Numbered from the stretch's first letter, positions 2,775 through 42,091 are shown. The stretch is 42,091 nucleotides of DNA from Piromyces finnis finn (GCA_002104945.1 MCFH01000113.1:1-42091); one strand, 5' to 3'. Translations and numbers: made by a program. Notes: generated by a model from the letters alone, not told the origin.

Positions 2775-2800
2775 ATATTGTAGATAATAATTATTACACA
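2775..2800. mobile_element. Terminal remnant of a family G-like LTR
   Basis: ATATTGTAGATAATAATTATTACACA resembles the G terminus (reverse complement of ~19860-19905) and ends in CA 3 nt before LTR C1. Confidence 0.4.
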
Positions 2801-2803
2801 ATA

Positions 2804-3511
2804 TGATGCAATATATTTCAAAAATACCATAAATAAAATATAACTATGAACGTTAGCAATAGGGAATGATATTTGAATAATATATTAGATAATATTGTAT
2901 TTATTTCTATTTTATAATAATAAGAATAAATGATAAAAATAATAAATTTTATAATAATATAATAAAATAGATTTTGGTTTAAAGTTTCTTTATTTAATTA
3001 TTATTATTATGATTATAACATTAATAACGTTCAATACTAATAGAATCGAAAGTTACTATTTAATAAATATAAAAATATATTGATAAAATTATTATTAATA
3101 ATAAAATATAACTTTTCTGAAATAATAAAAATAAACAATAAATATTATTTTCTTTTATAATTAATATTTAAACTGAGTTATATATAATAAATACTAAATA
3201 CGTAATTATTAACCTAAAACTACTAAAATAAAATAAAATAAAACTAATATTTAAAACTAAAATATCAAATATTATTTATAAATGAAAAGTTCTCTCTTTT
3301 TAATATCTTATTCTTTATAACTATTTTTATATCTTTTCCTTTCTTGTGTAACTAATTATTCTAATATATGTGTAACTTTTGAGTCATAATAATTTATACT
3401 AATATAGTTTAATTATTATTATCATTAGTAATTAGTATACAATTTATAAAAGGATTAGATATTATTCGTAAAATATTTAAAATATTATAGCTTTCTATGT
3501 ATCTTGTATCA
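2804..3511. mobile_element. Solo LTR family C, copy C1
   Basis: TGATGCAA...TTGTATCA terminal inverted repeat; homologous to 12521, 16023 and 21641 copies. Confidence 0.85.
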
Positions 3512-3514
3512 AAT

Positions 3515-3773
3515 TGTAAGAAATATTAATTATTCATAATTGAATAATTATTATTTCTTATTATTTAATAAAAATTTATTTAAATTATTATTTTCGATAC
3601 ATTCAATTATTAAATTATTTAATATTCCATTCATTTGATTGATATTAATGATTTATTTAAAATATTAATTTTATATACACTTATATAAATATAAAATTTA
3701 TTTATTATATTTTTATATATTTAATTAATATTATAAATTTATTTAATTATTAATCTTTACGTACATTTAATTA

Positions 3774-3805
<32 letters not shown>

Positions 3806-4435
3806 ATTATTTATCTTTTATATTTAATTTTGACTATTTATACTCATTACATTTATTGTTTTAAATTACGTATTAATTATATTTTTGTTATTGTATTAAG
3901 CACGGATAGAATAGGAATCGGTATTTTAAGGTTTTCCCGATTACGCTTTAAGGAGGCATTCGGTTTTACTTAAAATTACACGATGATCAATATGATTAGA
4001 ATATTGATCGAAAATCATGTTTAGGTTTTTCTTCTAGTCTTTTCCTAAACATTTCATTTGTTAAGATTAGAACCCATTTTATTTAACCTTATTTCTTAAT
4101 AAAATTATAAATAAAACACTCTTGAAATTCCTTAGAAATTCAAGAGTTATTATTATAAAGGAATACATTATAATAAATAACACAAATACATTTTTTCCTT
4201 TTTTAAAAAATAAAATAAAACATTCTTCTAATAAACCAATAATTAATAGATAATAAAATTTAATTAAATAACTTCCGCTCCATTTAATCCTTAGTGTTTT
4301 GTTGTTTATTATAAATCTTTATAATAAACTCGATAAGTTTTTCATTCTCTATTTTCTATTTTAATTTGTTCAATATTTCTTATTTAAACATATTATATAT
4401 ATATTACTACAATATTAATAGTTAATATTATATTG
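3515..4435. mobile_element. LTR family G, copy G1 (interrupted at its end)
   Basis: Starts TGTAAGAAAT 3 nt after C1; near-identical to the reverse complement of ~19900-20826. Confidence 0.75.
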
Positions 4436-4709
4436 TGTCAAGAGTTTGAGTGGATTTAGAGTTATAATTAAGTCTACTAGGTTAGGATAGGCTTAATTAT
4501 ATAGTAAATAATAAATTTTTATAAATAAAAGAATAATAAATATAGTTATTTTTATAAGAATTATTTTATTTAATTTTTATAATATAAATAAATGATAATT
4601 ATCAATTTTAAATATTTAATTTACTATATAAAAATGAGTATTAATAATCTCACAAAGAACTTCTTAAAGTTGTTCTTTGTTCAACTTATTTATACTTTCA
4701 TTTTTAACA
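4436..4709. mobile_element. Possible short LTR-like insertion (J)
   Basis: TGTCAAG start exactly where G1 homology stops; candidate end TTTAACA at 4709. No clean target-site duplication (TSD), so the end is uncertain. Confidence 0.3.
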
Positions 4710-5024
4710 TAATATAGATATTAATAAAATATAATAATAATATAATATAATTTTCTTTATATATCGATATTAATAAATTGTTAAAAATAATATTAATAAT
4801 TATTTAAATGAATCTTATTTTACTAATTGGTTTGTTTAATATTAATTAATTGTTACACTATTTATCTCCGGATAATAAATAGCTTTCCAATTAATATTTA
4901 TATTAAATAAACTATTATTAGTAATATATTATTAAATTAATATTTTAATTAATTTAACTAATAATTCAAAATTATGAAATTTCATGAAATGTCAAATTTC
5001 ATGAATTGTGATTTTGACAGTAAT

Positions 5025-6007
5025 TGTTAAGTTTTGGGATTTGGTTATGCGGCCAGGTCAGAATGTTTTAATTATATAGTAAAAAATGTTTTTTAAGAAA
5101 TTAAATTTAATTATAAAATAACACTTTAAACTTCCAAATGAAAAATTAATATTTATTTTTTAAAATAACTTTTTATAAAATTTTATTTATTTAGTAATAA
5201 TAAGATAAATGATAATATATTTAATAACTATATAATTAAGATTATAACTATAATCTTTACAAAGGATTAAAATCGAGTTCAACTTATTCTATTATATATT
5301 CTTTGTTCATATTATTAAATTGATAAAAATAAAGTATTACATGTAATATATTAATATAGTAAGATTGTTTGTTTGTTTGTTTGTCATGACATAAAAATAA
5401 AATAAACATATGATTAATCACTTAAACATTTGATCCGTTAACCTATTTTATAATAATTAGAATTATTTAATTTATAAATGTTAACTGTTACACCTAAATG
5501 GTTTAGTTCTATCTTTAGTAACAGTTACTAACATTAATTAAATTAATATAATTAAAATTTCTATTGATATATTTTTAATTTTTGTCAAGTCATAAGAAAT
5601 GTCTATGATCCATACTTGATATCATATTGATTTTAATTTATCTATTAAACTTTAAATTATCATAACTTCTTCAAATGATCAGTTAGAAAGACCGCGATTG
5701 TACCAAAATATAGCTTTTTTCCTAAGCTTTCTAATAAACTTAGTTTCACAGCCATAGCACTTACAGCCGTAACGCTCGTTTTTGGCGAGTTACGCGTAGT
5801 TTCGTATTTGTTTATTTTTGGCTAAGGGTTATAGTGTATTGATATTAAATTTTTTGAAATCATAACCCTTTCACTGAATCAAAATTTAAAAGGTGACTTT
5901 TAAAGGTGTTTTAAAATAATTATTGAAATTATTTAATTATAATTATTATATTTAATTAATTATAGATATTATCTGAATTTGTTTTAAATCCAGTTAATAT
6001 CTTCACA
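5025..6007. mobile_element. Solo LTR family B, copy B1, 5-bp TSD GTAAT
   Basis: TGTTAAG...CTTCACA; GTAAT at 5020-5024 and 6008-6012; homologous to 24630-25632. Confidence 0.9.
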
Positions 6008-6072
6008 GTAATTGTATTATACTATTTAATATAAATATTATAATAAAATTACTACAAAATAATGATACAATA

Positions 6073-6619
6073 TGATACAATAGTAAATATTATCTTAATT
6101 CTATATTTTACTATAGAAAGTAATAATATTTGTATCTAAAAAAAAAAATAAGAAAATAAAATAAATGATTTTTATACTTGTTCATTTGCAAGTATTAGTT
6201 AATTTTTAAAAATATGAAGTTTATTATATTTAATTATAAAATTAAAATATTATTTAATAACTCTCGTATTATTAAATAATTAAGAATTAATACATCTTGT
6301 ATGTATCATAGAAGTTATATAAAAAAAAAATATTGTTTTATTAAAATAAATATCTATTTCTCTCTTGGATAATTAGTAACCATTTATTAAATTTAATATA
6401 ATATATCTAATTTTGACGGATTATTAGGAACAATTTTAAAAAGAATGTTTTCTATTACTATTTATACAAAATTATTATTTTAAAGTATAATTATAAACAA
6501 ATATAAACTATTTAATTTAAAAATAAATAAGCAATTAAATAAATAAAAAGTTTACATTTATAATTTTAATTTAATAATTTTATACATGTTAAATATTTTA
6601 ATTTTTATCTGTATTTAAA

Positions 6620-6655
<36 letters not shown>

Positions 6656-6684
6656 TTATTATTTATAAATTTAATTATTTATCA
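6073..6684. mobile_element. Solo LTR family E, copy E1
   Basis: TGATACAA...ATTTATCA; inverted homologues at 15131-16018 and 20833-21635; carries an (ATT)n tract near 6620-6652. Confidence 0.8.
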
Positions 6685-6687: not shown

Positions 6688-7779
6688 TGACGCGTTGACC
6701 GATATATTTTTGAATAATGTTTTTGATAAATAATAAATTCTATATTATTATGATGAAACAATAAATTTAAAATGAAATGAAAATATGTTTTATAACTAAC
6801 AAATAAATCACTCAAAACTCGAAAATAAACTCTTATTATGTTTTAGATTAAATATTTATTATATTTTATAATATATTTATTATCTATTTATTGTCTTTTT
6901 TTTATTCTCTATTTATTGTCCCCTTTTTATGAAGAAGAATTTTATCTTCCTTTTATGCATTTTCATTTATTATATGTATTATTATTTTTAACTATTAAAT
7001 ATTATTATTATTATTGTTATTATTTATTAAAATTAAAAGAATAAATTAAAATTATGTCTTAGTATTATAAAATATTATAGAATATTACTTATTTGATTTT
7101 CTTATTACTTCAAAATGTTTAAATTTAGAAAAATTATTATAAATTATCATTGACTATCATTAAATGTATAATACCTTGAATAAAATAATTAAAATTTAAA
7201 ATTAAAATAATATTAAAATAAAATTAAAATATTAAAATTATCAATTATTATAAACACACATTTTATACAGAAACATAAAAGAGTTCTGTATTTTATCTTT
7301 AGGATTGTTATTATTATTCTATTTCCAGGTTTTAAGTTTATCATTTTTAGTAATAATTACTCAATTAGTTATTTATTAATTTATAAGTTTAAAAGAATTT
7401 CTAAAGAACACTTGGATAAAACACTAGAATTAATAATTTGATGTATACCATTTTATTTTTAGTTTATTTATTTATTTTTATTTATTTATTATTATTTTAT
7501 TATTTTAGTACATTATTGGATTAAGTCGTTTTATTTTATTTAATAATTTATTTTATTTAATAATTTATTTTATTATTATCACTATTAGGTTGTTTTTACT
7601 CAGAATTTATTATATAATAAAGAGAATATTATTTATTTAAGAAAGGGTTATATTTTCATAAAATTATTATTCATTCATTTTTAAAGGTTATTATCGTTTA
7701 TTTTTATTATAAGTTACCATGAGTTAAGTCGTGTTTATTCAGCTAGTTTTTATTATGCTTTTATGGGAGTAGCGTATCA
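6688..7779 (-). repeat. 3' LTR of element D
   Basis: On -, begins TGATACGC immediately after the PPT AAGTGGGGGGATCT. 7259-7779 aligns to 12000-12516. The distal end at 6688 is inferred from TG/CA and the TSD. Confidence 0.75.
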
Positions 7780-9978
7780 AGATCCCCCCACTTGAGTTTG
7801 GACTTCGTCCCTGGAAGTCTCATTATGCCAAGTATGATAATGAACTAAATTCTTTTGATGAACATTTCTTTCAGCTATTGCACCACTAATAAGGTTACAT
7901 AATGTAGCAGTATTAAATTCCATTTTAATAATACGGAAAGGTCCCATGAAAAATGGATCTAACTTTCTTCTTGAAAAATTTCTAACAAGTACTAAATCGC
8001 CAGCTGAAAATGCAGTATTCATTGAAGCTTTTTGTTTTCTTCTATTTTCCCATAATTTATTAGCATTCTGAATATTTTTGGTAACTTCAATAATCCATTC
8101 CCAATGTGTAGTAAATTTATTTATTAAATATTCTTCAGGAGTTTCATATTCATTTTTATTATTATATTCTATCATAAGTTCAAATGGTTGAAGGTCAGTA
8201 CGACCATATAATAATTCAAAGCTAGAAAATTTTGTTACTTCATTTTTACAAGTACGTAGAGTCAATAAAACCAATGGAAGAACTTCGTCCCATTCTTTAT
8301 TTAAGTCTCCTAATAGTCGAATATTTTTAACAATTTCTCTATTACGATTTTCTACTTGTCCATTTGTTTCTGGATGATAAGTGTTAGAATATTGAACATA
8401 TATAGCATATAAATCAAGAAAACCTTTAGTAGCATCAGAAGTAAATTGTGGACCATTATCAGTAATTAATATTTCTAGAGTACTATGTCTAGAAAATACA
8501 TTTGTAAGAAAATTTATAACATCCGTAGATTCAATTGATTTTAGTGGTTCAGCTTCAACCCATTTGGTAAAATAGTCTACAAGTACTATTATATATTTAT
8601 TATTGTTTTTAGTTATTAGTAGTGGTCCAATAATATCTAAACCAACTCTAGTAAATGGTAGACCTGGCTTTGTTGCAAATGATTCAGTACCACTATTAAT
8701 AGGTTGAGGTCTCTTTAATTGACAATCATGGCAAGTTTTTACAAGTAGTTCTACATCTTTAGCCATATTTTTCCAATAATAATTTTTCTTTAATCTGTTA
8801 TAAGTTTTATAAAATCCTTCATGATCTATTGAATGCACAGCTAATAGTAATTCTATTTTCTCTTCTTTATCTTCAACAGCTTTTCTGATATTGTCTCCAT
8901 CTTTATAATATTTTATTCCATTTATTAAGATAATTTTCTTTTTAAGAAATTCTTTAATTTTATTACTTTCTGGATATTCATTTGAATTATTTTCACTAGT
9001 ATCAATAGATGTGTCAGTTACAAGTACCGCTTCTGAGTCAGTATAATTATCTATTAATTTACTTTTTTCATTTTCAGATGGAACTGAGGATATTTTTATT
9101 TTATTTTCTATATTAAAATAATTATTATTCTGGCTCTTATCAATATCATTTTTAAAATTTATATTTATATTTTTATTTCCATGTGAATTATTATTAATAG
9201 AGATATAATTATTTAAATCAACATTATTAAGTTTAGAATATTTAATTGGATTTACACTTTCATTAACACAAGAATTTTTATTTAAGTCAATATTTTTATC
9301 AATATAAGGATTAATATTATTATTTTTATTTATTTCATTATCATTAATACATGAATTATTAAAATTACAAGAATAAACTATATTTTCATTATTTTTAGAG
9401 TAAAAATCTTTATTTGAATTTAAAATATTATTTTTAGTAGCTTCATCATCATTATTATTAAAAGTAGCTAGTGAAATTTTCATATCATTTTTATCTTCTG
9501 GTATTAGTCTAGATAATGCATCAGCGACTACATTTTTCTTTCCTTGTTCATATTTGACTTTTACCTTGAGCATACTAAGTGTAGTAACCCAGCGTGTTTG
9601 ACGAGCATTATTTGGTTCTTTATTATTAAATAAGCCAACTAAAGGTTTATGGTCAGTATATAATATCGTTTCTTCTTTATTCCCACTTATATAAGATTTA
9701 AATTTCTTACAACAACAAAAAGCTGCGGTTCCTTCTAAGTCAGTTATACTATAATTAATTTCACTATCGTTTAAAGACCTACTAACATAATGAATTGGAT
9801 GTTCAACATTATTTTCATCTTTTTGGAGTAATACACCACCAATACCATTAAGTGATGCATCAGTTCTTATAATAAAATTTTTATCATAGTCAGGATATTT
9901 TAAAATAGGAGACTTAATCAGTCTTTCTTTTAGCATTTGGAAACTTTCTTCAGTTTCAGATGTCCATTCAAATTTCAT
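7777..9978 (-). CDS. pol: Gypsy pol C-terminal part: RNase H and integrase
   Basis: TDAS...E...TDH...ADALSR (RNase H); HEG...CHDC zinc finger; DIIGP/DNG/ENRN DDE core; GPF motif; no chromodomain. The stop TGA is the first 3 nt of the LTR. Confidence 0.9.
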   Translation of the reverse strand: MKFEWTSETEESFQMLKERLIKSPILKYPDYDKNFIIRTDASLNGIGGVLLQKDENNVEHPIHYVSRSLNDSEINYSITDLEGTAAFCCCKKFKSYISGNKEETILYTDHKPLVGLFNNKEPNNARQTRWVTTLSMLKVKVKYEQGKKNVVADALSRLIPEDKNDMKISLATFNNNDDEATKNNILNSNKDFYSKNNENIVYSCNFNNSCINDNEINKNNNINPYIDKNIDLNKNSCVNESVNPIKYSKLNNVDLNNYISINNNSHGNKNININFKNDIDKSQNNNYFNIENKIKISSVPSENEKSKLIDNYTDSEAVLVTDTSIDTSENNSNEYPESNKIKEFLKKKIILINGIKYYKDGDNIRKAVEDKEEKIELLLAVHSIDHEGFYKTYNRLKKNYYWKNMAKDVELLVKTCHDCQLKRPQPINSGTESFATKPGLPFTRVGLDIIGPLLITKNNNKYIIVLVDYFTKWVEAEPLKSIESTDVINFLTNVFSRHSTLEILITDNGPQFTSDATKGFLDLYAIYVQYSNTYHPETNGQVENRNREIVKNIRLLGDLNKEWDEVLPLVLLTLRTCKNEVTKFSSFELLYGRTDLQPFELMIEYNNKNEYETPEEYLINKFTTHWEWIIEVTKNIQNANKLWENRRKQKASMNTAFSAGDLVLVRNFSRRKLDPFFMGPFRIIKMEFNTATLCNLISGAIAERNVHQKNLVHYHTWHNETSRDEVQTQVGGS

Positions 9979-10643
9979 ACCCTTTTTTAATAATTTAAAT
10001 AATGGATGAGCAATTTGGGCAAAATCTTTTATAAACTTCCTGTAATATCCTATAGCTCCTAAAAATGATCTTAGCTGTGTAAGGTTTGTTGGTGACTTCC
10101 AATTTTTAATAGTTTCAATTTTCTTTTCAGCTGGTTTAACACCTTCTACTGATAGAATATGACCAAGGACCTCTACTTCTTGTTTTAAGAAATGTCATTT
10201 AGAAAGATTTGCTTTTATACCATTTTCTTTTATTATATTAAAAACCTTTTGAAGATCTAATATATGTTGTTCAAGACTTGGAGAAAATACTAAAGGTCAT
10301 CCATATAAACAAATAAACATTTTCCAATAAGTGGTAGAAATATACGGTTCATTTCTCTTTGAAAGGTTGCTGGAGCATTACATAAACCAAAAGGCATTAC
10401 TTTGTAATTATAATTTCCAAATATTGTTGTAAAACATGTTTTATCAATATCTTTTTTTTTCATTGGTATTTGATGAAAACCAGAGAATAAATCCAATGTA
10501 GATAAATATTTTACATTATTACCAATAGAAAATAATATTTCTTCAATATATGGAAGTGGATATGAATCTTTTATTGTTATAGAATTTAATTTTCTATAAT
10601 CTACACACATTCTCCATTTTCCATTCTTTTTGTGTTTCATCAA
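9979..10643 (-). pseudogene. Element D reverse transcriptase, N-terminally deleted, with frameshift and in-frame stop
   Basis: KWRMCVDYRKL, LDLFSGFHQI, MPFGLCNAPATFQ, YMDD. Frame breaks near 10290 and a TGA near 10196. Confidence 0.85.
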
Positions 10644-10651
10644 CTATTTTA

Positions 10652-11972
10652 TTAATAAGTTGTAGGTTTAGAATCACTAGTAGTTTTAATTTCTAAATCT
10701 TGGTATTTATCATTCTGACTAGTTAAGTAATATATTAATGCACCTTGATTAATTTCTTCATCAAATTCTTCTATTAAATTAGTTTGATTCATTTCACTAA
10801 TACTTTCAAAAAATCCAATTTTGTGAATATCATCAGTTTTCTGATATAAAGTATGATCAGAAAAGTCCATAATTAATTTCATATTAGCTAAAGTTTCTAC
10901 ATCAATTAAGACCTGGAATATATCTTCTTTTTCAATAAGTCTAAATATTTCTTTAGATGTTATATTACCATTATCAATAGTAATTTCAATTTCATATAGA
11001 TGCGACTCAATAATAGTATTGGAATAAGCTTGATATAAAGTCTCTAATTTTTGAAACTGGTTTTAATGGAATATTATTTTCTAATAAGAATCTTATAGTA
11101 ATCATATTTATAGATGAACAAGAGTCCAAATATACAGTAGTTTCTATTCCTTCTATTTTACATTTTGATTTCACTACTTTATCTTTTCTTATGGTAGAAA
11201 GAATTGTAGATTCATCTTCAATAATTTTAGTAAATTTTAGTGCTTTTGAAAATTCTGTTTTTAATTTAGGACTAATTTCAAGTAGTTGGCCTATTGTTAT
11301 GTTTGCAAATTTTTCACCTATATCTTTAGTTATATTATATTTTTCTTGATCTGCTGAAATAACTAATCTTTTGGTACCTTTTTCATATGATATATTTTTT
11401 TCCTTTTGACTCGGAAGTTCAATCTCCTTTGCTAGTTCAATTATTTCTTTTTCTCGTTCTTTTTTATTATTTCGTTTAGCTTTATCTATAGTGGGTTGGT
11501 TAATGAATGAAGAATCTAATTGTTTTAATTCTTCTGTTGAATTAGTGTTATTATTAATATTATTATTATTGATATTATTATCTATCTTATTACTTTCATT
11601 ATTATTTATATTAGTGTCATTATTCATACTCATATTATTATTAATATTATTATTAAGACTTTTATTGTTATTATTATTATTTTCATTTTCGATTACAGTC
11701 TCCATTTCTACTTCATTATTTGGAACTTCAATTATATCTTCATAAGTATTATTTAATGGTTCTCTAGTCTCATTACTTGGAACTCTAATTGGTTGTGGAT
11801 TATCACTTAGTTTTTCTTTGGTAGTTCTTTTATATGGTTTAATATCAGTATTCTTTTTAGCTTTTCTTATTACTGGAATAGTAATTTCTTCATTTACTGG
11901 TACTGATATTGTAGCAAAAGTAGTATTGGTTTGATTTATGGGAGTATTCCTTCTCCCACTCATAAGTTTAAA
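10652..11972 (-). pseudogene. Element D pol N-terminus: post-frameshift linker and aspartic protease, broken into several frames
   Basis: ORF 11007-11963 contains ITIGQLLEISPKLKTE and VYLDSCSSINMI, homologous to element F pol. Confidence 0.75.
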
Positions 11973-11999
11973 TGATTTTGATTAGAGTTTATAAGGCCT

Positions 12000-12516
12000 C
12001 ATTTTATACAGAAACATAAAAGAGTTCTGTATTTTATCTTTAGGATTGTTATTATTATTCTATTTCCAGGTTTTAAGTTTATCATTTTTAGTAATAATTA
12101 CTCAATAGTTATTTATTAATTTATAAGTTTAAAAGAATTTCTAAAGAACACTTGGATAAAACACTAGAATTAATAATTTGATGTATACCATTTTATTTTT
12201 AGTTTATTTATTTATTTTTATTTATTTATTATTATTTTATTATTTTAGTACATTATTGGATTAAGTCGTTTTATTTTATTTAATAATTTATTTTATTTAA
12301 TAATTTATTTTATTATTATCACTATTAGGTTGTTTTTACTCAGAATTTATTATATAATAAAGAGAATATTATTTATTTAAGAAAGGGTTATATTTTCATA
12401 AAATTATTATTCATTCATTTTTAAGGGTTATCGTTTATTTTTATTATAAGTTACTATGGGTTAAGTCGTGTTTATTCAGTTAGTTTTTATTATGTTTTTA
12501 TATGAGTAGCGTATCA
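12000..12516 (-). repeat. Truncated 5' LTR of element D
   Basis: Aligns to 7259-7779 and is fused directly to the last gag codons. Confidence 0.85.
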
Positions 12517-12520: not shown

Positions 12521-13301
12521 TGATGCAATATATTTCAAAAACACCATAAATAAAATATAATTGTGAACGTTAGCAATAGGGAATGAGAGTTGAATAATAT
12601 ATTAGATAATATTGTATTTATTTCTATTTTATAATAATAAAAATAAATAATAAAAACAAATAATAAAAATAATAAATTTTATAATAATATAATTAAATAG
12701 ATTTTGGTTTAAAGTTTCTTTATTTAATTATTATTATTATTATGATTATAATTATAACATTAATAACATTCAATACTAGTAGAATCGAAAGTTATTGTTT
12801 AATGAATATAAATACTTAAATATAAAATGTAAATATAAAAATATGTTGATAAAATTCTTATTAATAATAAAATATAACTTTTTGAAATAATAAAAATAAA
12901 CAATAATTATTCTTTTCTTTTATAATTAATATTTTAAACTGAATTAAATATAATAAATATATACTAAATACGTAATTAGTGACCTAAAACTAAACTGAAA
13001 TAAACTGTAACTAAAATAAAATAAAATAGAACTTATACTTAAAACTAAAATATCAAATATTATTTATATATGAAAAGTTTTTCTCTTCTTTTATATATTG
13101 TTCTTTATCACTATTTTTATATCTTTTCGTTTCTTGTGTAATTAATTATTCTAATATATGTGTAACATTTGCGTCATAATAATTTATACTAATATAGTTT
13201 AATTATTATTAACACTAGTAATTGATATACAATTTATAAAAGGATTAGATATTATTCATGAAATACTTAAAATATTATATTTTTCTATGCATCTTGTATC
13301 A
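12521..13301. mobile_element. Solo LTR family C, copy C2, 4-bp TSD AATA, 16 nt upstream of tRNA-Gly
   Basis: TGATGCAA...TTGTATCA; AATA at 12517-12520 and 13302-13305. Confidence 0.9.
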
Positions 13302-13317: not shown

Positions 13318-13388
13318 GCGTTAATAGTATAGAGGTAGAATATTTGCCTTCCAAGCAAATGGCCCGGGTTCGATTCCCGGTTAACGCA
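13318..13388 (+). tRNA. tRNA-Gly(TCC)
   Basis: Acceptor stem GCGTTAA/TTAACGC; anticodon arm TTTGC-CTTCCAA-GCAAA; T arm CCGGG-TTCGATT-CCCGG. Confidence 0.95.
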
Positions 13389-13396
13389 TTTATAAT

Positions 13397-13468: not shown

Positions 13469-13478
13469 TTAATTTAAA

Positions 13479-14863: not shown

Positions 14864-14874
<11 letters not shown>

Positions 14875-32096: not shown

Positions 32097-32110
32097 TTTC
32101 TTGAGACAAT

Positions 32111-32124
32111 TGAGACTCTTAATC
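32111..32124 (-). promoter_or_regulatory. Copia PBS complementary to the anticodon arm of tRNA-Lys(CTT)
   Basis: GATTAAGAGTCTCA directly follows the 5' LTR; its complement is TGAGA-CTCTTAA-TC (stem, CTT loop, 2 nt of the 3' stem). Confidence 0.8.
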
Positions 32125-32480
32125 TTTTATGATTAAATATTATTATTATAATATTTTATATAACACCAACACTTTATAAATAAATATTTGTATAATATGT
32201 ATATATATTATTTTATATTTATTTATTATTATTTATTTATTAATATTTGTTATTAATATTTATTATTATTTAATACAAGTTATTTAATAATGTCTTTTCT
32301 TATATTATGAAAAGAACTACATTTTAATAATAGTAAAAAATATATATTTATATAATATTAAATAAAATTATACTTTTCATATAATTAATTTAATTAATAC
32401 ATAAAAATTTAAATAATATATAATTATATAATTAATTAATAGTAAATAAAATATAAAATTATTTCATTATAATTTTAACA
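32125..32480 (-). repeat. Copia 5' LTR
   Basis: On -, TGTTAAAA...ATCATAAAA; 356 bp. Confidence 0.93.
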
Positions 32481-34674
32481 AAGTCGAAAAATGTGTGAAA
32501 TTTAAATTATATTTATATAAAAAGCAAAAATATATATTAATGAGTTTCACTCCAACTACAATTATTATTATTGTTATTACTATTTAACATATAATGACTA
32601 TACTTTATCAACAAAATATTTTTTTTTTATGTAACTATATGTGGATGTGGATATATGAATAAATAATTATATTATAATTATTTTTATAATTATGAACTTT
32701 GATTTCTTAAAGGAAAGTAAAATCTCTTATTTATGATTAGTTAAAACTAATTTATTTAATGATTTTGATTATGTAATTTAAGAATAATCGTTTTAAATTA
32801 TTTTTAATTTTCTTTTTAAATTAAGTAAATAAAGACGTTTTATACTGATATAAAATATTTTATAACCATAATATAATTAATAATCTCCTAAACTATTAAA
32901 TAATAAAGCTTTTATTTAATTAAATAACTAAATAAAACTATTATTTAAATAAACTATTATAAATTCATTTATATTTATGAAAGATAAAACTACTTATTGA
33001 TATATTGATAATAAAAATTATATTATTAATGCCTTCTTTATTATAAATAAATGCTAAATTAATATGTTTTAGTTTTATAAATTATACAGAAAGTGATATA
33101 TTATATATTCCAGATTGTTTTTACTAATTTATTCTACAAACTTACTAAATTATTAAATAAAATTAAAACAATATTTCTATTTTTCTATTTTTATTTATAT
33201 TACATTATATTATTGTATCATAGTTAATATTTTTAAAATGATTCATTTTATTTGGGTAATGTTTAACTATTTCTAAATTAAAAATATTCATCAATAGTTT
33301 TTAATAATAAAAATTATTTCTTGTGTATAAACAACTATGTTTATAGCTTTCTAATTTTAACTTAAAAAATTATTTGATTTTAATATATAATTAATTTAAC
33401 ATTAAGTAATATAGATTATTATATATTAATTTAAGTCATAACTTTAAAAATAAATTATAAATTATTTAATAATTAGTCATTTGTTATATAAATTTGTAAT
33501 AATAAAAAGCAATAAAAGTATTAATAAATATTTATGGCTTCTAATTCATTCTTACTAATTATCTAAACCCTATCTTGAAGATTTTAATAAATAAATATTT
33601 AATTTTAAAAGTTTTAAAAAATGACAACTTTTATATTCATAGTAAATACAGTTTATAGTTTATTATTTCATAAATAATGATTAACCATATAAATAGGCAT
33701 ATAAATAAGTATATATTGAGATTTTACTTTTAGTAATATTATTATATTAATTAAAAAATGTAATAATGTGATGAATAGTTATCAAGCCAATATAGACTTA
33801 TAACATATATCTTCTATACTAATTTAAATAATCAAAATGTTATATTACTATAACTCTTATAAATATTAGTATGTAACTGAAAGCTAGAGCAAGAAAAGAT
33901 AGTTTAAGTTCTTTTAGAAAATGACGGTAGTGTGTGAATTTTGGAGGATATTATTCATTTTATGTATTATTTATTTTATTAAAGGATTATAATTGACTTT
34001 AATTTTTAATAAATTAATTTTTTTTAAAATTTTTTTACCAATAATCATTTGAAATAATTTTTGAATTGAATTAATAAGACACTATTTGAAATTAGCTTTA
34101 AATATAATCATAATAATTTATCAATTTATTAGTTTTATGCCTTTCCTTAATAAAAATTGTTTCTGGTTGATAAATTTTGACTGTTAATATAGTTTTATAT
34201 AATGAATATAATTTAAATTACATATTAAAATAAAGATAACAGAAATAATAAATATATTCTTAGTTGAATATTAATAAATAAATAATAAAAAAAAATAATG
34301 TAACAATTACTCGATCTTAATAGTATTTTAAATAAACAAATAATTTATACAATTATACTTTTAATTATAATTTATGTTTCATTATTAATTAACATTTAGT
34401 TAAAAGCTATGTATACTTTTAAAGCAGTTATATTTAAATAAATAATTTAAATAAATATATTTAATTAATTATTATCTAAAATATATTAGAAATAAAATTA
34501 GCATTTCAATTTATTTATCATTATCTATAAACTAATAACGTCAAGACATATTATAATTATGCAATAAAATAAATAGATTATAAAATAAAAATATTAAAGT
34601 AATTGAAATACTTTTTAAATTTCTTTCTTTAATACTTTTAATAATTAAAATATAGTATAAACCCAATAATAAAA

Positions 34675-34747
34675 TGCGAAGTGTGAGGTTCGAACTCACG
34701 ACCTTAAGATTATGAGACTTACGCGCTGCCGACTGCGCCAACTTCGC
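34675..34747 (-). tRNA. tRNA-Met(CAT), elongator type
   Basis: Acceptor stem GCGAAGT/ACTTCGC; loop CTCATAA; G1-C72 pair and TTCGAAC T loop indicate elongator; TTTT follows immediately. Confidence 0.93.
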
Positions 34748-34757
34748 AATAACTATT

Positions 34758-34839
34758 CGTCACCTGCAGGACTCGAACCTGCGCTCCCAAAGGGAAATGG
34801 CTTAGCAGGCCACCGCGTTAACCACTCCGCCAAAGTAAC
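34758..34839 (-). tRNA. tRNA-Ser(GCT)
   Basis: Acceptor stem GTTACTT/AGGTGAC with G73; anticodon arm GTGGC-CTGCTAA-GCCAT; long variable arm TCCC-TTT-GGGA. Confidence 0.95.
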
Positions 34840-34856: not shown

Positions 34857-35688
34857 TGTTAAGGAATGAACATAAATAGTTGAATTAGCTAGAATTTTAG
34901 GAATTAACCTTCAACTATTTATATTCCTTACTAGTGTTTAACTCTATTTTTAAAATATAAAAATTATAATATATAATTTTTATACATTTTTCTAGTAATT
35001 ATTCATATTTTTATTATATAGTTATATTATTTGTATATAGTTATTTAAGACCTTTATTATTAGTATTAGTATAATTACTTATAATATTTTATACTTATAA
35101 ATTTTACAAAATTTTATTATTATTTAAGGTTTATTTTATTAATTAACTTTATTGTATAATATTTTATAATTTGAAATTATGACATAGAATTTAATTATAA
35201 TTTTTACTAAAAGAGGCAACTGTTACACACAAAACAGAAGATACCTCGACAGAAAAATTATTATTTATGTCTAAAAAAGGGCATAATTAATTGAATAATA
35301 TAATTTTATTATATGTCATAATAAAATATATAATATATGATATGCAAAAATGTTACACATATCATAAATTAAAATTTTATTAATTATAAATTAAAAAATT
35401 TTCTATTCAAATATTAAGAGATTATTCATAATATATATTAAGGATTTAATTAATATATGTTATAGTGAATGATCCATATATTATGAATGAAATCAATTTA
35501 AATCCTTAGCTATCCAAAACCATTAAATTTCAAATAATGGATAGTTGGAAAAAGTACGAGGATTTTTGAGAAAATTTTTAAAAATTGAAAAATCAAAAAT
35601 AAATTAAATGAATAAAAATTAAAATTAAATAAATTTTTATTTTTATAACTATTCAAGTGTTTTGTGATATCTTATTTGAACCGTAGCA
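34857..35688 (+). repeat. Element F 5' LTR (832 bp)
   Basis: TGTTAAGG...CCGTAGCA. Confidence 0.93.
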
Positions 35689-35695
35689 TAATTAA

Positions 35696-35713
35696 TGGTG
35701 GAGATATCGGGGA
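35696..35713 (+). promoter_or_regulatory. Element F PBS complementary to the 3' end of a tRNA-Ala
   Basis: TGGTGGAGATATCGGGGA; the complement ends ...TCTCC-A-CCA (U70-C71-C72-A73, consistent with Ala identity). Confidence 0.75.
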
Positions 35714-36104
35714 TAATAATAACATATTGATATCACACTACATTTTTATAGTTATTTTTATATTTATTTTTGTATTATTATTTAATTAAAATAGTTAATA
35801 ATTCAAAAGAGGGTTATACTAGTATAATAAAAAGTTATATACTTCAAGGCACAATTAAAATAGTTAATAGAGAGAAATTAATATTGTTAATTGGTGCAGT
35901 TAAGGAAGTATTTTATATTGGTATTACTAGTTTAACTAAAGAGAATAATTATTAGTGTTGTTAATTAAATATATTTCAAATATTGTTGTAATTCATTCTT
36001 TTAAATTCTTATAAAAGAAAATTATTTTTTTTTTAAACTTGTTTCATTCTTTAATATTATTGTAAAATTGTATTTTTATCTTTATTTAAAACTTGTATAT
36101 AAAA

Positions 36105-37013
36105 ATGAGTACGGGAGCTGATAAATCTATTGACTTTGCTAAATTAATGAAGGAATTAAAGCATGTCACTAGATTAACCGAAGATAATTTGGACATTAAG
36201 ACTTGGTATAGTCAATTAAAGTATTGGACTATGCTTCAAGATGTTAAAAGTCCAAAAATGGTGTTTCTAGCTTGTTTGTTTACTACTACAGGAACACCAA
36301 ATGAACTTATTCAAGAGTTGAATCCTAATAAGGACTTCGAAAGTGATGAAGACAGTGAAGATAGTGATGAAGAAGATGAAGGTAGAGGAAAGAGAAGAGC
36401 TCACTACCCTTCCCTTAAAAAGATAGTCACTATGTTAGAAGAATTTTATGGAGTAAAGGAAGATCAAATAGAACTTCTCAAGGAGCTTAGGGATATGCGA
36501 ATCAAAAAGAATGAAAAAGTAAAAGACTTCAACATAAGGTACCGTTCCTTGTATGTCAAACTAGACAAGAAGCGTAGAAGGAAAGTAGATGTTGAAGATT
36601 ACTTAGATTCCATTGAGCCTAACTATAAAGCCTGGGAAAATGTGCGTAGGGAAAAAGAAGTTACCTTAGCAGAAGCCTACAAGCTTGCCGAAGATGGGGA
36701 CAGACTAAATTTAAGAAATCGTCATAAAGCTAACAATTATGATGTATCCACCTCTTCTAACTCTGATAAAAGATATAAAAATAAATATGAAAGAAAAGAA
36801 GATAGCTATGAAAGGAACAAGAAGCCAACAATAGCGAATTATGGTAATGATAAGAAAGATCCTATGAATGAGTTGACGGAGAAAATGAGAAACTTAACTA
36901 TCAAAACTTGCTACTTTTGCAACGAGAAGGGACACTTTCAATATCATTGTCCTAAGCTGAGTGCCATAGTAGAAGAAAACAAACAAAAGGCCAGAAAAGG
37001 TCATTTAAATTAG
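36105..37013 (+). CDS. gag: Gag with C-terminal CCHC zinc knuckle
   Basis: First ATG at 36105; CYFCNEKGHFQYHC; located between PBS and pol. Confidence 0.9.
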   Translation: MSTGADKSIDFAKLMKELKHVTRLTEDNLDIKTWYSQLKYWTMLQDVKSPKMVFLACLFTTTGTPNELIQELNPNKDFESDEDSEDSDEEDEGRGKRRAHYPSLKKIVTMLEEFYGVKEDQIELLKELRDMRIKKNEKVKDFNIRYRSLYVKLDKKRRRKVDVEDYLDSIEPNYKAWENVRREKEVTLAEAYKLAEDGDRLNLRNRHKANNYDVSTSSNSDKRYKNKYERKEDSYERNKKPTIANYGNDKKDPMNELTEKMRNLTIKTCYFCNEKGHFQYHCPKLSAIVEENKQKARKGHLN

Positions 37014-40000
37014 ATAGTGGGAGAAGAAGCACTCCCAGTAATCCAAAAATAGCTTCACTTAATAACAGTTCAGTTGATAATAATGAGTACTCTGAATATT
37101 CTGAGTATTCTGACTTATCAGATAATGAAGAAATATCTTCTATTGAAGATAAAATTATTGCTGCAGCTAAAAGAAAAGCTAATGATGAAGAAGACTCTTC
37201 CAAGAAAAGAGTACAAAAATCATTAAAAGAAGACCCAAGACCAATAGTTACCCCTGCTACTAGGAAGCAACAAGAACGTGAACTCAGTAATGAGAGTTTA
37301 GAATCAGGTTCACCATCACAACCCAAGAACCAACTTGACACGTCTGTTCTGAGTCAACCTAATATTAACAAGGAAAAAGAAAAAAGTAAAAGACTCAGAG
37401 AAAAACAAAGAAGTAAACCACCAACCCCCATAAATAAAGACGAAAGAGAAGAAAACGAAGATATGGAGGTCAGTATTGATACGGAAGATAAAGTAGAAGT
37501 AGAAAAAGCTAAAAAGAAAAATACAGATATTCTACCGACGTTATTGAAAATGACTAAAGATAAAGAAAAAGATAAAACTAAAGAGGAGAAAGTCACACGT
37601 AATATCCAAATGAGAGGTGATACCAGTGATTATGATATTTTTGAAGATTTAAACACAGCTAAATGTGATATTACTTATGGACAGTTATTTAATGTATGCC
37701 CAAAAATAAGAACACAACTTTCCCAAGGACTAAAGTTAGAGAAAGTACAAAGCAAGGTATCAGGTGCATTAAATAACATAGTAGCTACTACAACCTTATT
37801 AAATAATATCTACCATGACTATATAAGTAAGAATAATGAAGCTTCAGAAGAGGATATAGCAATGGTGGATGCGACTGTGGATGGAATACCAGGAAAACTA
37901 CTGGTGGATACGTGTAGTAACTTAAATGTTATTACATCTTCTTTTTACAAAAGACTACCAAAGGAATATGAAGTGGTAGGAATAAGCAAAGGACGTATTC
38001 GACTAGCTACTACTGATGAAGAATACTCTGAGGGTACTGTGGTGTGTATACCAGTTAGAATAGGAGAGGTAGAACTAGTGGTTGACTTCAGAATACTTGA
38101 AAAAGAAGAACCGTTCTATGATATGTTAATAAATTATAAAACTCAAGTAGATAATTTATTATATATAAATCCAGTAACCAAGAGCTTATGTCAAGTGAAA
38201 GAAAGAGGTGTAGTAGAAGAAATAGTACCTATCAATAACCAATATTATAATGAAGGAAAATTGGTATGTACTATTAAGAAGATACCAGATGGAGATACTA
38301 AAAGCTTGAAGTCTATTGAAGGTTTACCACCTCAGGAGTATATACACAATGAGATATTCTTGAACACCTTACCAAAAGATAAACGGAAAGAAATACTCCG
38401 ACTTTTGGAAGAAAACTTAGAGATTATTGCGACGTCTTCTGAGGAATTAACGCCTTCTAAATTATCACCACATAAAATAAATCTAAAGGCTGGTGTAAAA
38501 CCAGTTAAACAAAGAGCTTATAGGTTAACTAAATTTAAATCAGATATACTAAAAGAAGAGTTAACTAAGCTAATAGAAAAAAAGTTAATAGAGCCGTCCT
38601 ATTCAGAATGGTCCTCCCCTGTAGTTCTGGTTCCAAAACATAATGGTAAGTGGAGAATGTGTGTGGACTATAGGAGAGTGAACGACCTCACGGAAAAGGA
38701 CTCTTATTCACTCCCCTATATTGATGAAATATTTGATAGTCTGAACGGAGCCAAAATATTCACTACTATGGACTTATATTCAGGTTATCATCAAATTTCT
38801 ATGCATGAGGAAAGCACTGAGGTTACTAGTTTTACTACCAAGTTTGGTAACTATCAGTTTAAGGTCATGCCGTTTGGGTTAACTAATGCACCAGCAACTT
38901 TTCAGAGGGAAATGAATAAGATATTATTTCCTTTAATAGGAAATTGTGTATATAATTTTATTGATGATGTACTCATATATTCCAAGAGTGTGGAAGAACA
39001 CATGGAACATATTAAGAGAGTATTTGAAATATTGAAAGAAAATGAATTAAAAATAAATCTTGAGAAATGTAGTTTTATGAAGGAAGAAGTAAATGTATTA
39101 GGTCACAGGTTATCTACTAAAGGTTTGAGTCCTTTGGAAAGTAAAATAGAAGCCATAAGGAAGTGGGAAGCTCCAGGAAATATTCATGAGTTACGTTCAT
39201 TTTTGGGTGCAGTAGGATATTATCGAAATTTTATTCCTAATTATTCTCAAGTAACCGCGCCCTTATGTGAGTTATTAAAGAAAAATGTACGATATAAATG
39301 GGAAGAAAAACATGAAAAAGCATTTAAAGTATTAAAAGAAAAACTGATAAACGCTCCCATTTTAAAGTTTCCTGAATTTGATAAGCCTTTTATCATACGT
39401 ACGGACGCGTCGTATGAAGGAGTGGGTGGTGTTTTATTACAAGAAGATGAAACTAACAAAATAGAACACCCGGTACATTATATTAGTCGAAGTCTTAGTA
39501 AAGCGGAGAAGAACTATGGAATAACAGAGTTAGAAGGTGCTGCGTTATTCTTTTGCGTGAGTAAGTTAAAACCTTATATTTTAGGAAACCCGTACACTAC
39601 TATGGTTTATACGGACCATAAACCACTTTTGGGTTTATTTAAAAATAAGGAACCAAATAGTGCACGTCACAACAGATGGTGTCTTACAGTAAGTCAGTTG
39701 GATATTGATATTCAATATGATAAAGGAAAGAATAATGTTATAGCTGATGCATTATCAAGAATGAAGAATAAAGAGGAGAAAAAGATACTGGTAACAAAAA
39801 TTAATAAAACTAATAATGAAGAGTTATTAACCAAAGTTATTAAGGAGTTTATAGCTGAAAAATTTACTACCATAGATGGGAAGGACTATTTCGTAGATGG
39901 TAATAACTTACGTCAGCTAATATCTACTGTAGAAGAAAAAGTAAAGTTAATATTTCAAGCACATAACGTAGGTCATGAAGGTTATTATAAGACTTATCAA

Positions 40001-40979
40001 AGGTTAAAGAAAAATTATTATTGGAATGATATGATAGCGGATATTAAAAGAATTATTAGCAAGTGTGAGAAGTGTCAAGTAAATAGACCACAACCTTATC
40101 CAGAACCAACTGAGGACAAAGCTACTAAAGTGGAAGGACCATTTGTACATCTAGGTTTGGATATTATTGGGCCATTACCTAAGACAAGAAATAGTAAACA
40201 ATATATAATAGTCATAGTTGACTATTTTACTAAATGGGTAGAAGCCGAAGCGGTGGAAACTGTTACTTCTCTGGACGTGATAAAGTTTTTAATAAATGTG
40301 TTTGCAAGACATGGGGTACCACAAGTTATTACTACAGATAATGGAACTCAATTTACCTCAGATATGACAAAGATATTTCTAGACCTATATGACGTATATG
40401 TGAAGTTCACAGTTCCCTACCACCCTGAAAGTAATGGATTAACAGAAAACCGAAATAAGGAAATTGGGAAACTTTAAGACTTTTAGGGAAAGAAAGTAAA
40501 GACTGGGATGAAGTTCTACCTTCCGCGCTTTGGGCCTTAAGAACTACAAAGAATACGGCTACGAAACATTCAAGTTTTGAGCTAGTTTATGGTAGGGAAG
40601 ACCAACAACCTTTTGATATAGCTGCCCGACCCACTAAAGATCAAAACAAGAGTTCCGATGAAATTCTTTTGGAAAAGTTTATAAATCACTACCGATGGAC
40701 CCTAGAAGCTGCTGAAAATGTAAAGACGGCTAATAAATATTGGTCTATGAGAAGAGAAGAAAAATTAAGTATGAACCAAGCTAAGAAAATAAAAGTAGGT
40801 GACCTAGTTTTGGTAAGAAACTTCAGTAGAACAAAATTGGAACCTTACTTTGTAGGACCTCTCAAAGTGGTCCAGAAACAGTTCAATACAGTAGTCTTAG
40901 CAGACCCAGAAACTGGAGTACTATGAACAGAAATGTACATTTCAAAAATGTCGTTAAATATAACTCAGCAACGGAGTAG
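37001..40979 (+). CDS. pol: Pol (PR-RT-RH-IN) in the -1 frame; two single-base frame breaks near 40470 and 40925
   Basis: Open from 37001. LVDTCS; WRMCVDYRRV; FIDD; TDAS; GHEG...CEKC; DIIGP/DNG/ENRN. Shifted frames continue DWDEVLPSALWALRT, YFVGP and RNVHFKNV to a TAG at 40979. Confidence 0.9.
37004..37037 (+). promoter_or_regulatory. Predicted -1 ribosomal frameshift signal
   Basis: T-TTA-AAT heptamer in gag phase, 7-nt spacer, then TGGGAG-8 nt-CTCCCA hairpin; the same layout occurs in element D. Confidence 0.8.
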
Positions 40980-41003
40980 CTTGAGTTTTAACGAAGGGCA
41001 TTC

Positions 41004-41830
41004 TGTTAAGGAATGAACATAAATAGTTGAATTAGCTAGAATTTTAGGAATTAACCTTCAACTATTTATATTCCTTACTAGTGTTTAACTCTATTTTTAA
41101 AATATAAAAATTATAATATATAATTTTTATACATTTTTCTAGTAATTATTCATATTTTTATTATATAGTTATATTATTTGTATATAGTTATTTAAGACCT
41201 TTATTATTAGTATTAGTATAATTACTTATAATATTTTATACTTATAAATTTTACAAAATTTTATTATTATTTAAGGTTTATTTTATTAATTAACTTTATT
41301 GTATAATATTTTATAATTTGAAATTATGACATAGAATTTAATTATAATTTTTACTAAAAGAGGCAACTGTTACACACAAAACAGAAGATACCTCGACAGA
41401 AAAATTATTATTTATGTCTAAAAAAGGGCATAATTAATTGAATAATATAATTTTATTATATGTCATAATAAAATATATAATATATGATATGCAAAAATGT
41501 TACACATATCATAAATTAAAATTTTATTAATTATAAATTAAAAAATTTCTATTCAATATTAAGAGATTATTCATAATATATATTAAGGATTTAATTAATA
41601 TATGTTATAGTGAATGATCCATATATTATGAATGAAATCAATTTAAATCCTTAGCTATCCAAAACCATTAAATTTCAAATAATGGATAGTTGGAAAAAGT
41701 ACGAGGATTTTGAGAAAATTTTTAAAAATTGAAAATCAAAAATAAATTAAATGAATAAAAATTAAAATTAAATAAATTTTTATTTTATAACTATTCAAGT
41801 GTTTTGTGATATCTTATTTGAACCGTAGCA
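41004..41830 (+). repeat. Element F 3' LTR (827 bp)
   Basis: Differs from the 5' LTR by five single-base homopolymer indels only (by eye); preceded by GAAGGG-CATTC. Confidence 0.93.
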
Positions 41831-41834
41831 AATT

Positions 41835-42091
41835 TGATACGCTACTCACATAAAAACATGATAAAAACTAGCTGAATAAACACGACTTAACCCATAGTAA
41901 CTTATAATAAAAATAAACAATAATAACCTTAAAGATGAATGAATAATAATTTTATGAAAATATAACCCTTAAAGATGAATGAATAATAATTTTATGAAAA
42001 ATATAACCCTTTCTTTAAATAAATAATATTCTCTTTTATTATATAATAAATTCTGAGTTAAAAAATGACCTAATAAGTTTGATTTTTAATA
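41835..42091 (+). mobile_element. LTR family D, copy D3 (cut by the window edge)
   Basis: TGATACGCTACTC is the reverse complement of the 7779/12516 ends; includes an internal ~40-bp duplication at ~41925-42010. Confidence 0.88.

What the first reader, a model, noticed from the sequence alone, without database searches (positions are those of the whole stretch)
2775..42091. Multi-family LTR stacks anchored 13-17 nt upstream of every tRNA locus: a polarised insertion record
Seen: all three tRNA loci have an LTR end 16, 13 and 17 nt from the first mature tRNA 5' end. Behind each, LTRs of distinct families (C, D, E, G, K, F) abut end-to-end in both orientations, with 3-5 nt linkers matching the sequence at that site (AATA, AAAA, AATT). 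Known: yeast Ty3 integrates at Pol III start sites via TFIIIB, about 16-17 nt upstream of the mature tRNA, and Dictyostelium DGLT-A and TRE5 also target tRNA 5' flanks. Inference: many families reuse one nucleotide-precise site, each insertion displaces the previous one, and most collapse to solo LTRs, leaving a chronological array anchored at the tRNA. The two gypsy elements with coding sequence use a 4-bp TSD and -1 frameshifting, unlike Ty3 (5 bp, +1), which suggests independent evolution. I do not recall this being described in early-diverging fungi but cannot search the literature.
Basis: partly seen in the sequence, partly recalled or inferred. Interest (0 to 1): 0.92.

Follow-up and report, generated by a model that had tools for sequence, protein, structure and literature searches.

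The report
Retrotransposon stacks anchored at tRNA genes
In this very AT-rich genome, probably an anaerobic gut fungus, many families of jumping genes insert at fixed distances upstream of tRNA genes (about 15 and about 66 bases), piling up in layers as yeast Ty3 and slime-mould elements do, and I found no paper describing this in this group of fungi.

Summary
LTR ends lie 16, 13 and 17 nt upstream of tRNA-Gly, tRNA-Cys and tRNA-Ser. Behind each, solo LTRs and three full elements abut through 3-6 nt linkers that repeat the local spacer (AATA, AAAA, AATT).

Target-site duplications show reuse of the same site. C2 has AATA on both sides and gypsy2 has AATT on both sides.

The pattern is genome-wide. 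Pattern searches gave 113 LTR-end to tRNA junctions against 0 in the controls. Spacers run 11-22 nt and most fall in 13-17.

- **Second register.** Families A, B and X, with 5-bp duplications, end 64-69 nt upstream (28 hits, 0 control). They often sit about 50 nt inside a resident LTR, so the stack is not strictly chronological.
- **Downstream copia.** The young copia element here belongs to a family that sits 4-200 nt downstream of tRNA genes.

The −15 site is used by at least two gypsy lineages that share only about 33% pol identity. Neither has a chromodomain. One uses a −1 frameshift and the other a single ORF.

This is Ty3/DGLT-A-like targeting of RNA polymerase III genes in a new host group. 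Tethering to TFIIIB is inferred, not shown. Independent origin from Ty3 was not tested.

This scan has already reported the same stacks on other contigs of this genome.

The parts
13318..13469 (+). tRNA-Gly(TCC) and tRNA-Thr(TGT) pair, 7 nt apart. Anchor of the Gly stack. The 16-nt spacer is 13302-13317.
12521..13301 (+). C2 solo LTR (TGATGC...TGTATCA), 781 nt, 4-bp duplication AATA on both sides. It is the youngest layer and has 99-100% identical copies elsewhere in the genome.
6688..12516 (-). gypsy1 (family F). gag ORF 11007-11963, RNaseH-IN ORF 7777-9978, RT broken by frame changes. The 5' LTR is 12000-12516 and the 3' LTR region is 6688-7779. The shared 522 nt are 97.9% identical. A purine tract lies next to the 3' LTR. 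Flanks are (A)ATA and AATA.
6073..6684 (+). E solo LTR (TGATACAAT...TTATTTATCA)
3515..6056 (+). D solo LTR, split into 3515-4435 and 6013-6056 by two successive insertions about 45 nt from its end: X (4436-5019) and B (5025-6007, 5-bp duplication GTAAT on both sides).
2804..3511 (+). C1, an old copy of family C, 85% identical to C2
1561..2774 (+). A solo LTR (TGTAAAG...TTGACA), flanks ATATA and ATATT. It interrupts an older gypsy remnant whose RT lies at 4-727 (-).
26322..26393 (+). tRNA-Cys(GCA). Anchor of the Cys stack. The 13-nt spacer is 26309-26321.
25688..26308 (+). K solo LTR (TGATAACGG...TTATTTATCA), the proximal layer of the Cys stack
22438..25681 (+). D'' LTR, split into 22438-23398 and 25638-25681 by A' (23399-24625, duplication TTAAC) and B' (24630-25632, duplication ATTAA), both inserted about 45-50 nt from its end.
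14248..22434 (.). Older layers of the Cys stack: P 14248-14849, E2 15477-16018, C3 16023-16657, H 18513-19221, Y 19271-19852, D' 19858-20826 (duplication CAAAA), E' 20833-21635 (carrying X' fragment 21477-21583), C4 21641-22434. Linkers are A-rich.
26552..32480 (-). Ty1/copia element with an intact 1681-aa Gag-PR-IN-RT ORF (27051-32096), 356-nt LTRs that are 100% identical, and a 5-bp duplication AAGTC. It lies 157 nt downstream of tRNA-Cys.
34674..34839 (-). tRNA-Ser(GCT) and tRNA-Met pair. Anchor of the Ser stack. The 17-nt spacer is 34840-34856.
34857..41830 (+). gypsy2. LTRs 34857-35688 and 41004-41830 are 99.4% identical. A primer-binding site (TGGTGGAGATATCGGGG) begins 7 nt after the 5' LTR. 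gag 36093-37013 has a CCHC knuckle. The slippery T TTA AAT is at 37004-37010. pol lies in the -1 frame (ATG-to-stop ORF 37463-40477). The IN C-terminus is in another frame (40459-40923). No chromodomain. The 4-bp duplication is AATT.
41835..42091 (-). F-family LTR displaced by gypsy2. Its U3 start faces the tRNA. It is cut by the window end.

Best explanation
The window is a gene-free island made of three RNA polymerase III transcription units and the retrotransposons that targeted them. It is the whole 42-kb contig.

Several Ty3/gypsy families lacking a chromodomain integrate at a fixed distance from the first tRNA of each unit. Their LTR ends lie 11-17 nt from the mature 5' end, with 4- or 5-bp duplications depending on family. 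Each new insertion lands between the previous LTR and the tRNA and pushes older copies outward. LTR-LTR recombination then reduces most copies to solo LTRs.

A second set of LTR families (A, B, X; 5-bp duplications) integrates 64-69 nt upstream whatever sequence lies there, often about 50 nt inside the resident LTR.

A young copia family integrates downstream of tRNA genes.

Shown: the positions, the duplications, the reuse of one site, the genome-wide generality, the element classes and their states.

Inferred by analogy with Ty3, Tj1, DGLT-A and TRE5: integrase is tethered to the polymerase III pre-initiation complex. TFIIIB is the likeliest partner, with the two registers lying on either side of its footprint.
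For: - Distances and duplications were read in the window.
- The site is set by distance, not by sequence. At least 12 tRNA species and an unidentified B-box gene are targeted, each copy with its own spacer.
- In tandem pairs, only the first tRNA has an LTR upstream.
- The -66 ends lie over native sequence in some loci and over 50-54-nt LTR stubs in others.
- Counts: 23 + 90 hits at about -15 and 28 hits at about -66, with 0 controls each. Allowed spacer ranges were about 0-28 and 48-80 nt, yet values cluster at 11-17 and 64-69.
- In the tRNA-centred sample, 19 of 25 upstream flanks have a repeat boundary at 8-18 or 60-70 nt. None of 21 downstream flanks has one at 8-18 nt.
- Intact or near-intact elements sit at the site: gypsy2, and the L015 element (1354-aa single ORF, 100% identical LTRs, 16 nt from tRNA-Arg).
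- Domain order is PR-RT-RH-IN, and Ty3 is the best match among solved structures.
- In 900 kb of metagenome contigs carrying distant gypsy relatives there is no tRNA at all.
Against: - No polymerase III start site, TFIIIB footprint or integrase-partner contact was measured.
- Only about 320 kb of this genome could be read. The remainder rests on exact-motif pattern hits.
- Some junctions are segmental duplicates and not independent events.
- The coding partners of A, B and X are unknown. Only solo copies were seen among 40 B hits.
- The offset differences in D-type LTRs are unexplained: 11-13 nt with the ATTTCTTACA end facing the tRNA and 15-19 nt with the other end facing it.
- The contig is all repeats, so large-scale order could be misassembled. 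The junction evidence is local and does not depend on that order.
Confidence: 0.85

Rival explanations
1. Integration is random. Selection removes insertions elsewhere and leaves survivors in harmless DNA next to tRNA genes.
For: The window has no host protein genes. TE-rich contigs with many tRNAs are common in this genome.
Against: - Selection cannot give a precision of 2-3 nt.
- It cannot give identical duplications at successive layers.
- It cannot give two sharp registers, or zero hits at other spacers within the allowed ranges.
- Downstream flanks lack the -15-type boundary.
Confidence: 0.03
2. A few ancestral LTR-tRNA junctions were copied around the genome by segmental duplication or gene conversion, so the recurrence reflects copying and not repeated targeting.
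For: - Several junctions are exact duplicates. Examples: C181:397430 and C229:21295 match the window's Gly and Ser junctions, and several Arg/Glu/Trp loci repeat.
- tRNA-Arg copies share their 3' flanks.
Against: - Most junctions pair different tRNA species with different spacers and LTR families.
- Duplications flank individual LTRs.
- Young elements with identical LTRs sit at the site.
Confidence: 0.05
3. New elements recognise the DNA itself and not the polymerase III machinery. The cue would be the end of a resident LTR, or the AT-rich junction sequence.
For: Most insertions land right at a resident LTR end. D-type duplications often include the resident LTR's terminal CA.
Against: - The distance to the tRNA stays constant across unrelated resident LTRs.
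- The -66 register occurs in native sequence with no LTR, for example C4:48043.
- LTR ends inside the stacks, away from tRNAs, are not re-targeted.
Confidence: 0.07

Closest known systems
Ty3 of Saccharomyces cerevisiae, and the Ty3-like Tj1, Tyl3/Ylt1/Tyl6 and Tca8 of other ascomycetes (review PMC5911963)
   Same: - Ty3/gypsy order PR-RT-RH-IN with no canonical chromodomain.
- Integration within a few bases of one point just upstream of tRNA genes.
- Solo LTRs left at the site.
- Ty3 is the best match among solved structures (7q5b, E 9e-106).
   Different: - The host appears to be an early-diverging fungus.
- Duplication is 4 bp in gypsy2 and C, against 5 bp in Ty3.
- Gag/pol uses a -1 frameshift or a single ORF, against +1 in Ty3.
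- At least two lineages sharing only about 33% pol identity use the site.
- Stacks reach 12 kb or more.
- The gypsy2/H/F lineage always has its U3 start facing the tRNA: 29 TTCCTTAACA junctions, against 0 for the two U5-end motifs tested.
Dictyostelium DGLT-A, TRE5, TRE3 and Skipper-2 (PMC5006619, PMC6101501)
   Same: One AT-rich genome holds several unrelated retroelement types aimed at tRNA genes: one about 15 nt upstream (like DGLT-A), one further upstream (like TRE5 at about 50), and one downstream (like TRE3 and Skipper-2 at about 100). The L015-type element, like DGLT-A, has a single ORF and no chromodomain.
   Different: - The further-upstream register is at 64-69 nt, not about 48, and is used by LTR elements, not LINEs.
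- The downstream element is Ty1/copia. PMC5006619 reports that dictyostelids have no copia elements.
- The host is a fungus.
Ty1, Ty2 and Ty4 (copia elements of yeast)
   Same: Copia-type elements associated with polymerase III genes.
   Different: The yeast elements insert upstream over a wide window of hundreds of bases. The copia family here lies downstream of the tRNA 3' end: 13 independent cases out of about 19 insertions, at 4-198 nt.

Membership tests
Ty3/gypsy (Metaviridae) LTR retrotransposons | LTRs with TG...CA ends, gag, and pol in the order PR-RT-RNaseH-IN | tested here: met
   Pfam RVT_1, RT_RNaseH, Integrase_H2C2 and rve occur in that order in gypsy2, gypsy1 and L015. LTR ends were read.
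Ty3-like position-specific integrators at polymerase III genes | LTR end in a narrow window just upstream of tRNA genes, about 16-19 nt from the mature 5' end for Ty3 (that figure is from my own knowledge) | tested here: met
   Spacers are 13, 16 and 17 nt in the window. Genome-wide they are 11-22 nt with a mode of 15. The position relative to the transcription start was not measured.
Ty3-like position-specific integrators at polymerase III genes | Integrase binds TFIIIB (Brf1/TBP) | not testable with these tools
Ty3 itself (clade membership) | 5-bp duplication and +1 gag/pol frameshift (+1 per PMC5911963; the 5-bp figure is from my own knowledge) | tested here: not met
   gypsy2 has a 4-bp AATT duplication and a -1 slippery site. 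L015 has a single ORF.
Ty3 itself (clade membership) | Groups with Ty3 in an RT/IN tree | not tested
   No named reference sequences could be loaded. The only evidence is that Ty3 is the best solved-structure match.
Chromoviruses | Chromodomain at the integrase C-terminus | tested here: not met
   There is no Chromo hit at E<=1 in the IN tails of gypsy1 and gypsy2, and none at E<=0.1 in L015. Only an SH3-like C-terminal domain was found.
Ty1/copia (Pseudoviridae) | IN placed before RT, with copia-type gag and RVT_2 | tested here: met
   The 1681-aa ORF has Retrotran_gag_2, rve and then RVT_2.
TRE5-like targeting further upstream | Non-LTR (LINE) element about 50 nt upstream of tRNA genes | tested here: not met
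   A, B and X have TG...CA ends and 5-bp duplications and lie at 64-69 nt. They behave like TRE5 in using a second upstream register but are not members.

The most novel reading that the evidence does not exclude
This fungal lineage evolved at least three separate polymerase III-anchored integration registers on its own: about -15 (used by two deeply diverged gypsy lineages), a sharp -66 register used by LTR elements, and a downstream register used by a copia element. The -66 and downstream-copia modes would be tethering geometries not yet described for LTR elements.
Probability: 0.45. Interest if true: 0.75.

Novelty: new member of a known kind. Interest (0 to 1): 0.6.

Why it matters
All fungal tRNA-targeting retrotransposons listed in the 2018 review are from ascomycete yeasts, and the other well-studied case is dictyostelid amoebae. 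A probable anaerobic gut fungus with dozens of LTR families using nucleotide-precise sites would extend the phenomenon deep into the fungal tree.

The system offers several things:
- A natural layered record of successive integrations.
- Intact candidate elements for integration assays: gypsy2-like, L015-type and the copia family.
- Two sharp upstream registers that could map the edges of the polymerase III pre-initiation complex.

It also bears on assembly and annotation of these genomes, because many small contigs are made of tRNA and LTR islands like this one.

Tried and rejected
- **Fetching more of the genome.** Later genome-wide tests used coordinates and 80-nt match strings only.
- **Exact-protein lookup of the copia polyprotein.** Not on record.
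- **Cross-species test.** Contigs carrying close relatives of the L015 element and an NCBI contig with a 42% relative hold no tRNA. A metagenome scan for the tRNA-Arg 33-mer found nothing. 79 metagenome loci with mostly 28-38% relatives hold no tRNA. These serve only as a negative control.
- **Extra tRNA-like genes inside the stacks.** None was found in the window, so the A...B interruption is explained by ordinary layering.
- **Rfam on the 'GGGACGGGACC' B-box repeat.** No family matched.
- **Empty-site comparison between strains.** Only the source sample holds this DNA.
- **Tree with Ty3 and DGLT-A, and an integrase-TFIIIB complex prediction.** Not possible without reference or host sequences.
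- **First self-BLAST with lenient scoring.** It was useless in this AT-rich DNA and was replaced.

Full report
**What the window is**

The window is the whole contig C17 of a 56,455,805-bp assembly in 232 contigs. GC is 11-37%.

Close relatives of one of its gypsy elements occur in metagenomes, and a 66%-identical one occurs in an Orpinomyces protein set. That points to an anaerobic gut fungus (Neocallimastigomycota). From memory the assembly statistics match Piromyces finnis, but I did not verify this.

The window holds no host protein genes. It has three polymerase III units:
- tRNA-Gly/Thr at 13318-13469 (+)
- tRNA-Cys at 26322-26393 (+)
- tRNA-Ser/Met at 34839-34674 (-)

Most of the rest is retrotransposon sequence.

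**Checking the observation**

Direct reading gives LTR ends at 13301, 26308 and 34857, so the spacers are 16, 13 and 17 nt.

Self-BLAST with strict scoring, and BLAST against 48 other loci of the same genome, define the LTR units. The ends are TG...CA.

Three elements have coding sequence:
- **gypsy1**, 6688-12516 (-), degenerate.
- **A copia element**, 26552-32480 (-), with an intact 1681-aa ORF, identical LTRs and the duplication AAGTC.
- **gypsy2**, 34857-41830 (+), with LTRs 99.4% identical.

**Proof of site reuse**

C2 (12521-13301) is flanked by AATA on both sides. Its left AATA directly follows the end of gypsy1. So before C2 arrived, the gypsy1 end stood 16 nt from tRNA-Gly, exactly where the C2 end stands now.

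gypsy2 is flanked by AATT on both sides, and the outer AATT abuts an F-family LTR. So F also stood 17 nt from tRNA-Ser.

Through the 12-kb Cys stack the linkers are AAAA, AAAAG, AAA, CAAAA and CAAAAA. These match the A-rich spacer of tRNA-Cys. In the Gly stack the linkers are AATA-like.

**A second register**

B (5025-6007) has GTAAT on both sides and follows X (4436-5019). Both interrupt LTR D about 45 nt from its tRNA-proximal end.

In the Cys stack, A' (duplication TTAAC) and B' (duplication ATTAA) interrupt D'' about 45-50 nt from its end. An X fragment interrupts E' 52 nt from its end.

In other loci the B and X ends stand 66-68 nt from tRNA-Arg and tRNA-Met.

Genome-wide, the end motifs of B, X and A followed by a B box gave 28 hits and 0 controls, with spacers of 64-69 nt out of an allowed 48-80. 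The intervening sequence is native in some loci and an LTR stub in others. So the stack is layered, but not strictly in order of age.

**Generality of the -15 register**

I took twenty loci centred on tRNA hits chosen by score alone.
- Most first tRNAs have an LTR 'CA' end 11-17 nt upstream.
- Of 25 non-redundant upstream flanks, 14 have a repeat boundary at 8-18 nt, 9 at 60-70 nt, and 19 have one or the other.
- None of 21 downstream flanks has a boundary at 8-18 nt.

Pattern searches over the whole genome support this:
- The D-type end gave 23 hits and 0 controls, with spacers mostly 11-13 nt.
- The degenerate motif for the gypsy2/H, K/E, C and K-start ends gave 90 hits and 0 controls. About 69 of these are canonical tRNAs, with spacers of 11-22 nt. 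By my hand count about 64 fall in 13-17 nt, and the mode is 15.

Targets include Arg, Gly (two species), Cys, Ser (two), Glu, Thr, Ala, Leu, Val and Trp. They also include a multi-copy, unidentified B-box gene.

**The elements**

gypsy2:
- gag carries a CCHC knuckle.
- pol is in the -1 frame.
- The heptamer T TTA AAT sits in register immediately before the gag stop.
- Its integrase is interrupted by one frame change near 40470.
- Its C-terminus has no chromodomain.

gypsy1 pol shares about 54% identity with gypsy2, but it has several frame breaks, so its frameshift mode cannot be judged.

A different lineage shares about 33% pol identity with gypsy2. It is represented by an intact element in L015: a single 1354-aa ORF, no chromodomain, and 770-nt LTRs that are 100% identical. 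It ends 16 nt from tRNA-Arg. Its LTRs match D'' of the window.

So at least two deeply diverged gypsy lineages use the -15 site.

In the gypsy2/H/F lineage the U3 start faces the tRNA:
- 29 junctions with TTCCTTAACA were found.
- The two U5-end motifs tested gave none.
- gypsy1, gypsy2, H and the F solo in the window are all oriented this way.

Exact U5 motifs may undercount diverged copies.

**Age and order**

Family C fits the layering model:
- C2 (layer 1) has 99-100% identical copies elsewhere.
- In the Cys stack, C4 (3.9 kb out) is 94% identical to C2, and C3 (9.7 kb out) is 88%.
- In the Gly stack, C1 (9.8 kb out) is 85% identical to C2.

Proximal full elements have LTR identities of 99.4% (gypsy2) and 100% (L015). 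gypsy1, one layer back, has 97.9%. I could not do a proper regression on family consensus.

**Mechanism**

The positions depend on distance from the gene and not on local sequence. They apply to many polymerase III genes. In tandem pairs, only the first gene is affected.

This is the behaviour of Ty3, Tj1 and DGLT-A, which target the polymerase III pre-initiation complex (PMC5911963, PMC6101501). The likeliest reading is that the two registers lie on either side of the TFIIIB footprint. This step is inference only.

**Literature**

Seven searches found no description of tRNA targeting in Neocallimastigomycota or other early-diverging fungi. The library covers only part of the literature. The review's table lists fungal cases in ascomycetes only.

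**Earlier notes of this scan**

Earlier notes report the same stacks on other contigs and flag the second register. I tested both points myself here.

Noticed in passing
window 26552-32480; loci L021-L050: The copia family is young: many copies have 100% identical LTRs. It sits downstream of tRNA 3' ends in 13 independent cases out of about 19 insertions, at 4-198 nt, in both orientations, and never upstream. Chance expectation is about 1%. I found no copia element with this habit in the papers read.
   Followed up: partly
genome coordinates (e.g. C13:414974, C90:355712, C185:226065): A multi-copy gene starting TCGTTCCAGTTTTTATCC, with a B box (GGTTCGACC), has LTR ends 4-12 nt upstream at 17 or more loci and B/A-type ends 61-63 nt upstream. 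By eye it does not fold as a canonical tRNA. It is probably another polymerase III gene whose effective start lies about 6 nt further in.
   Followed up: partly
L001:4180-4331 (-), also L008, L010, L035, L039, L043: A GC-rich unit (GGGACGGGACC...GGTTCGAACCCC) with a B box lies inside a repeat. LTR ends sit 8-12 nt upstream of it in some copies. It has no Rfam match.
   Followed up: partly
D-type LTRs stand 11-13 nt from the tRNA when the ATTTCTTACA end faces it, but 15-19 nt when the other end (GAATTATTACA) faces it. In all five of the latter cases the spacer begins with CA or TACA. This looks like a copied end of a resident LTR, but it is unexplained.
   Followed up: partly
window 6688-7779 versus 12000-12516: The two LTRs of gypsy1 are unequal (1092 and 517 nt). 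Solo copies elsewhere carry the long form (L001, L016, L019, L007). One possibility is recombination of a short-LTR cDNA with a resident long solo LTR.
   Followed up: no
window 13318-13469, 34674-34839; L003, L005, L007 (Glu-Arg): tRNA genes occur as tight tandem pairs 7-10 nt apart: Gly-Thr, Ser-Met and Glu-Arg. The Ser-Met pair recalls the dimeric tRNA genes of fission yeast (from my own knowledge).
   Followed up: no
window 22554-22881: A 41-nt tandem repeat array, with near-perfect copies, lies inside LTR D''.
   Followed up: no
window 26280-26308 and other LTR ends: The AT-rich LTR ends place TATA-like sequence about 25-30 nt upstream of the tRNA. This might keep the polymerase III promoter working after the native upstream DNA is displaced. 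This is speculation.
   Followed up: no
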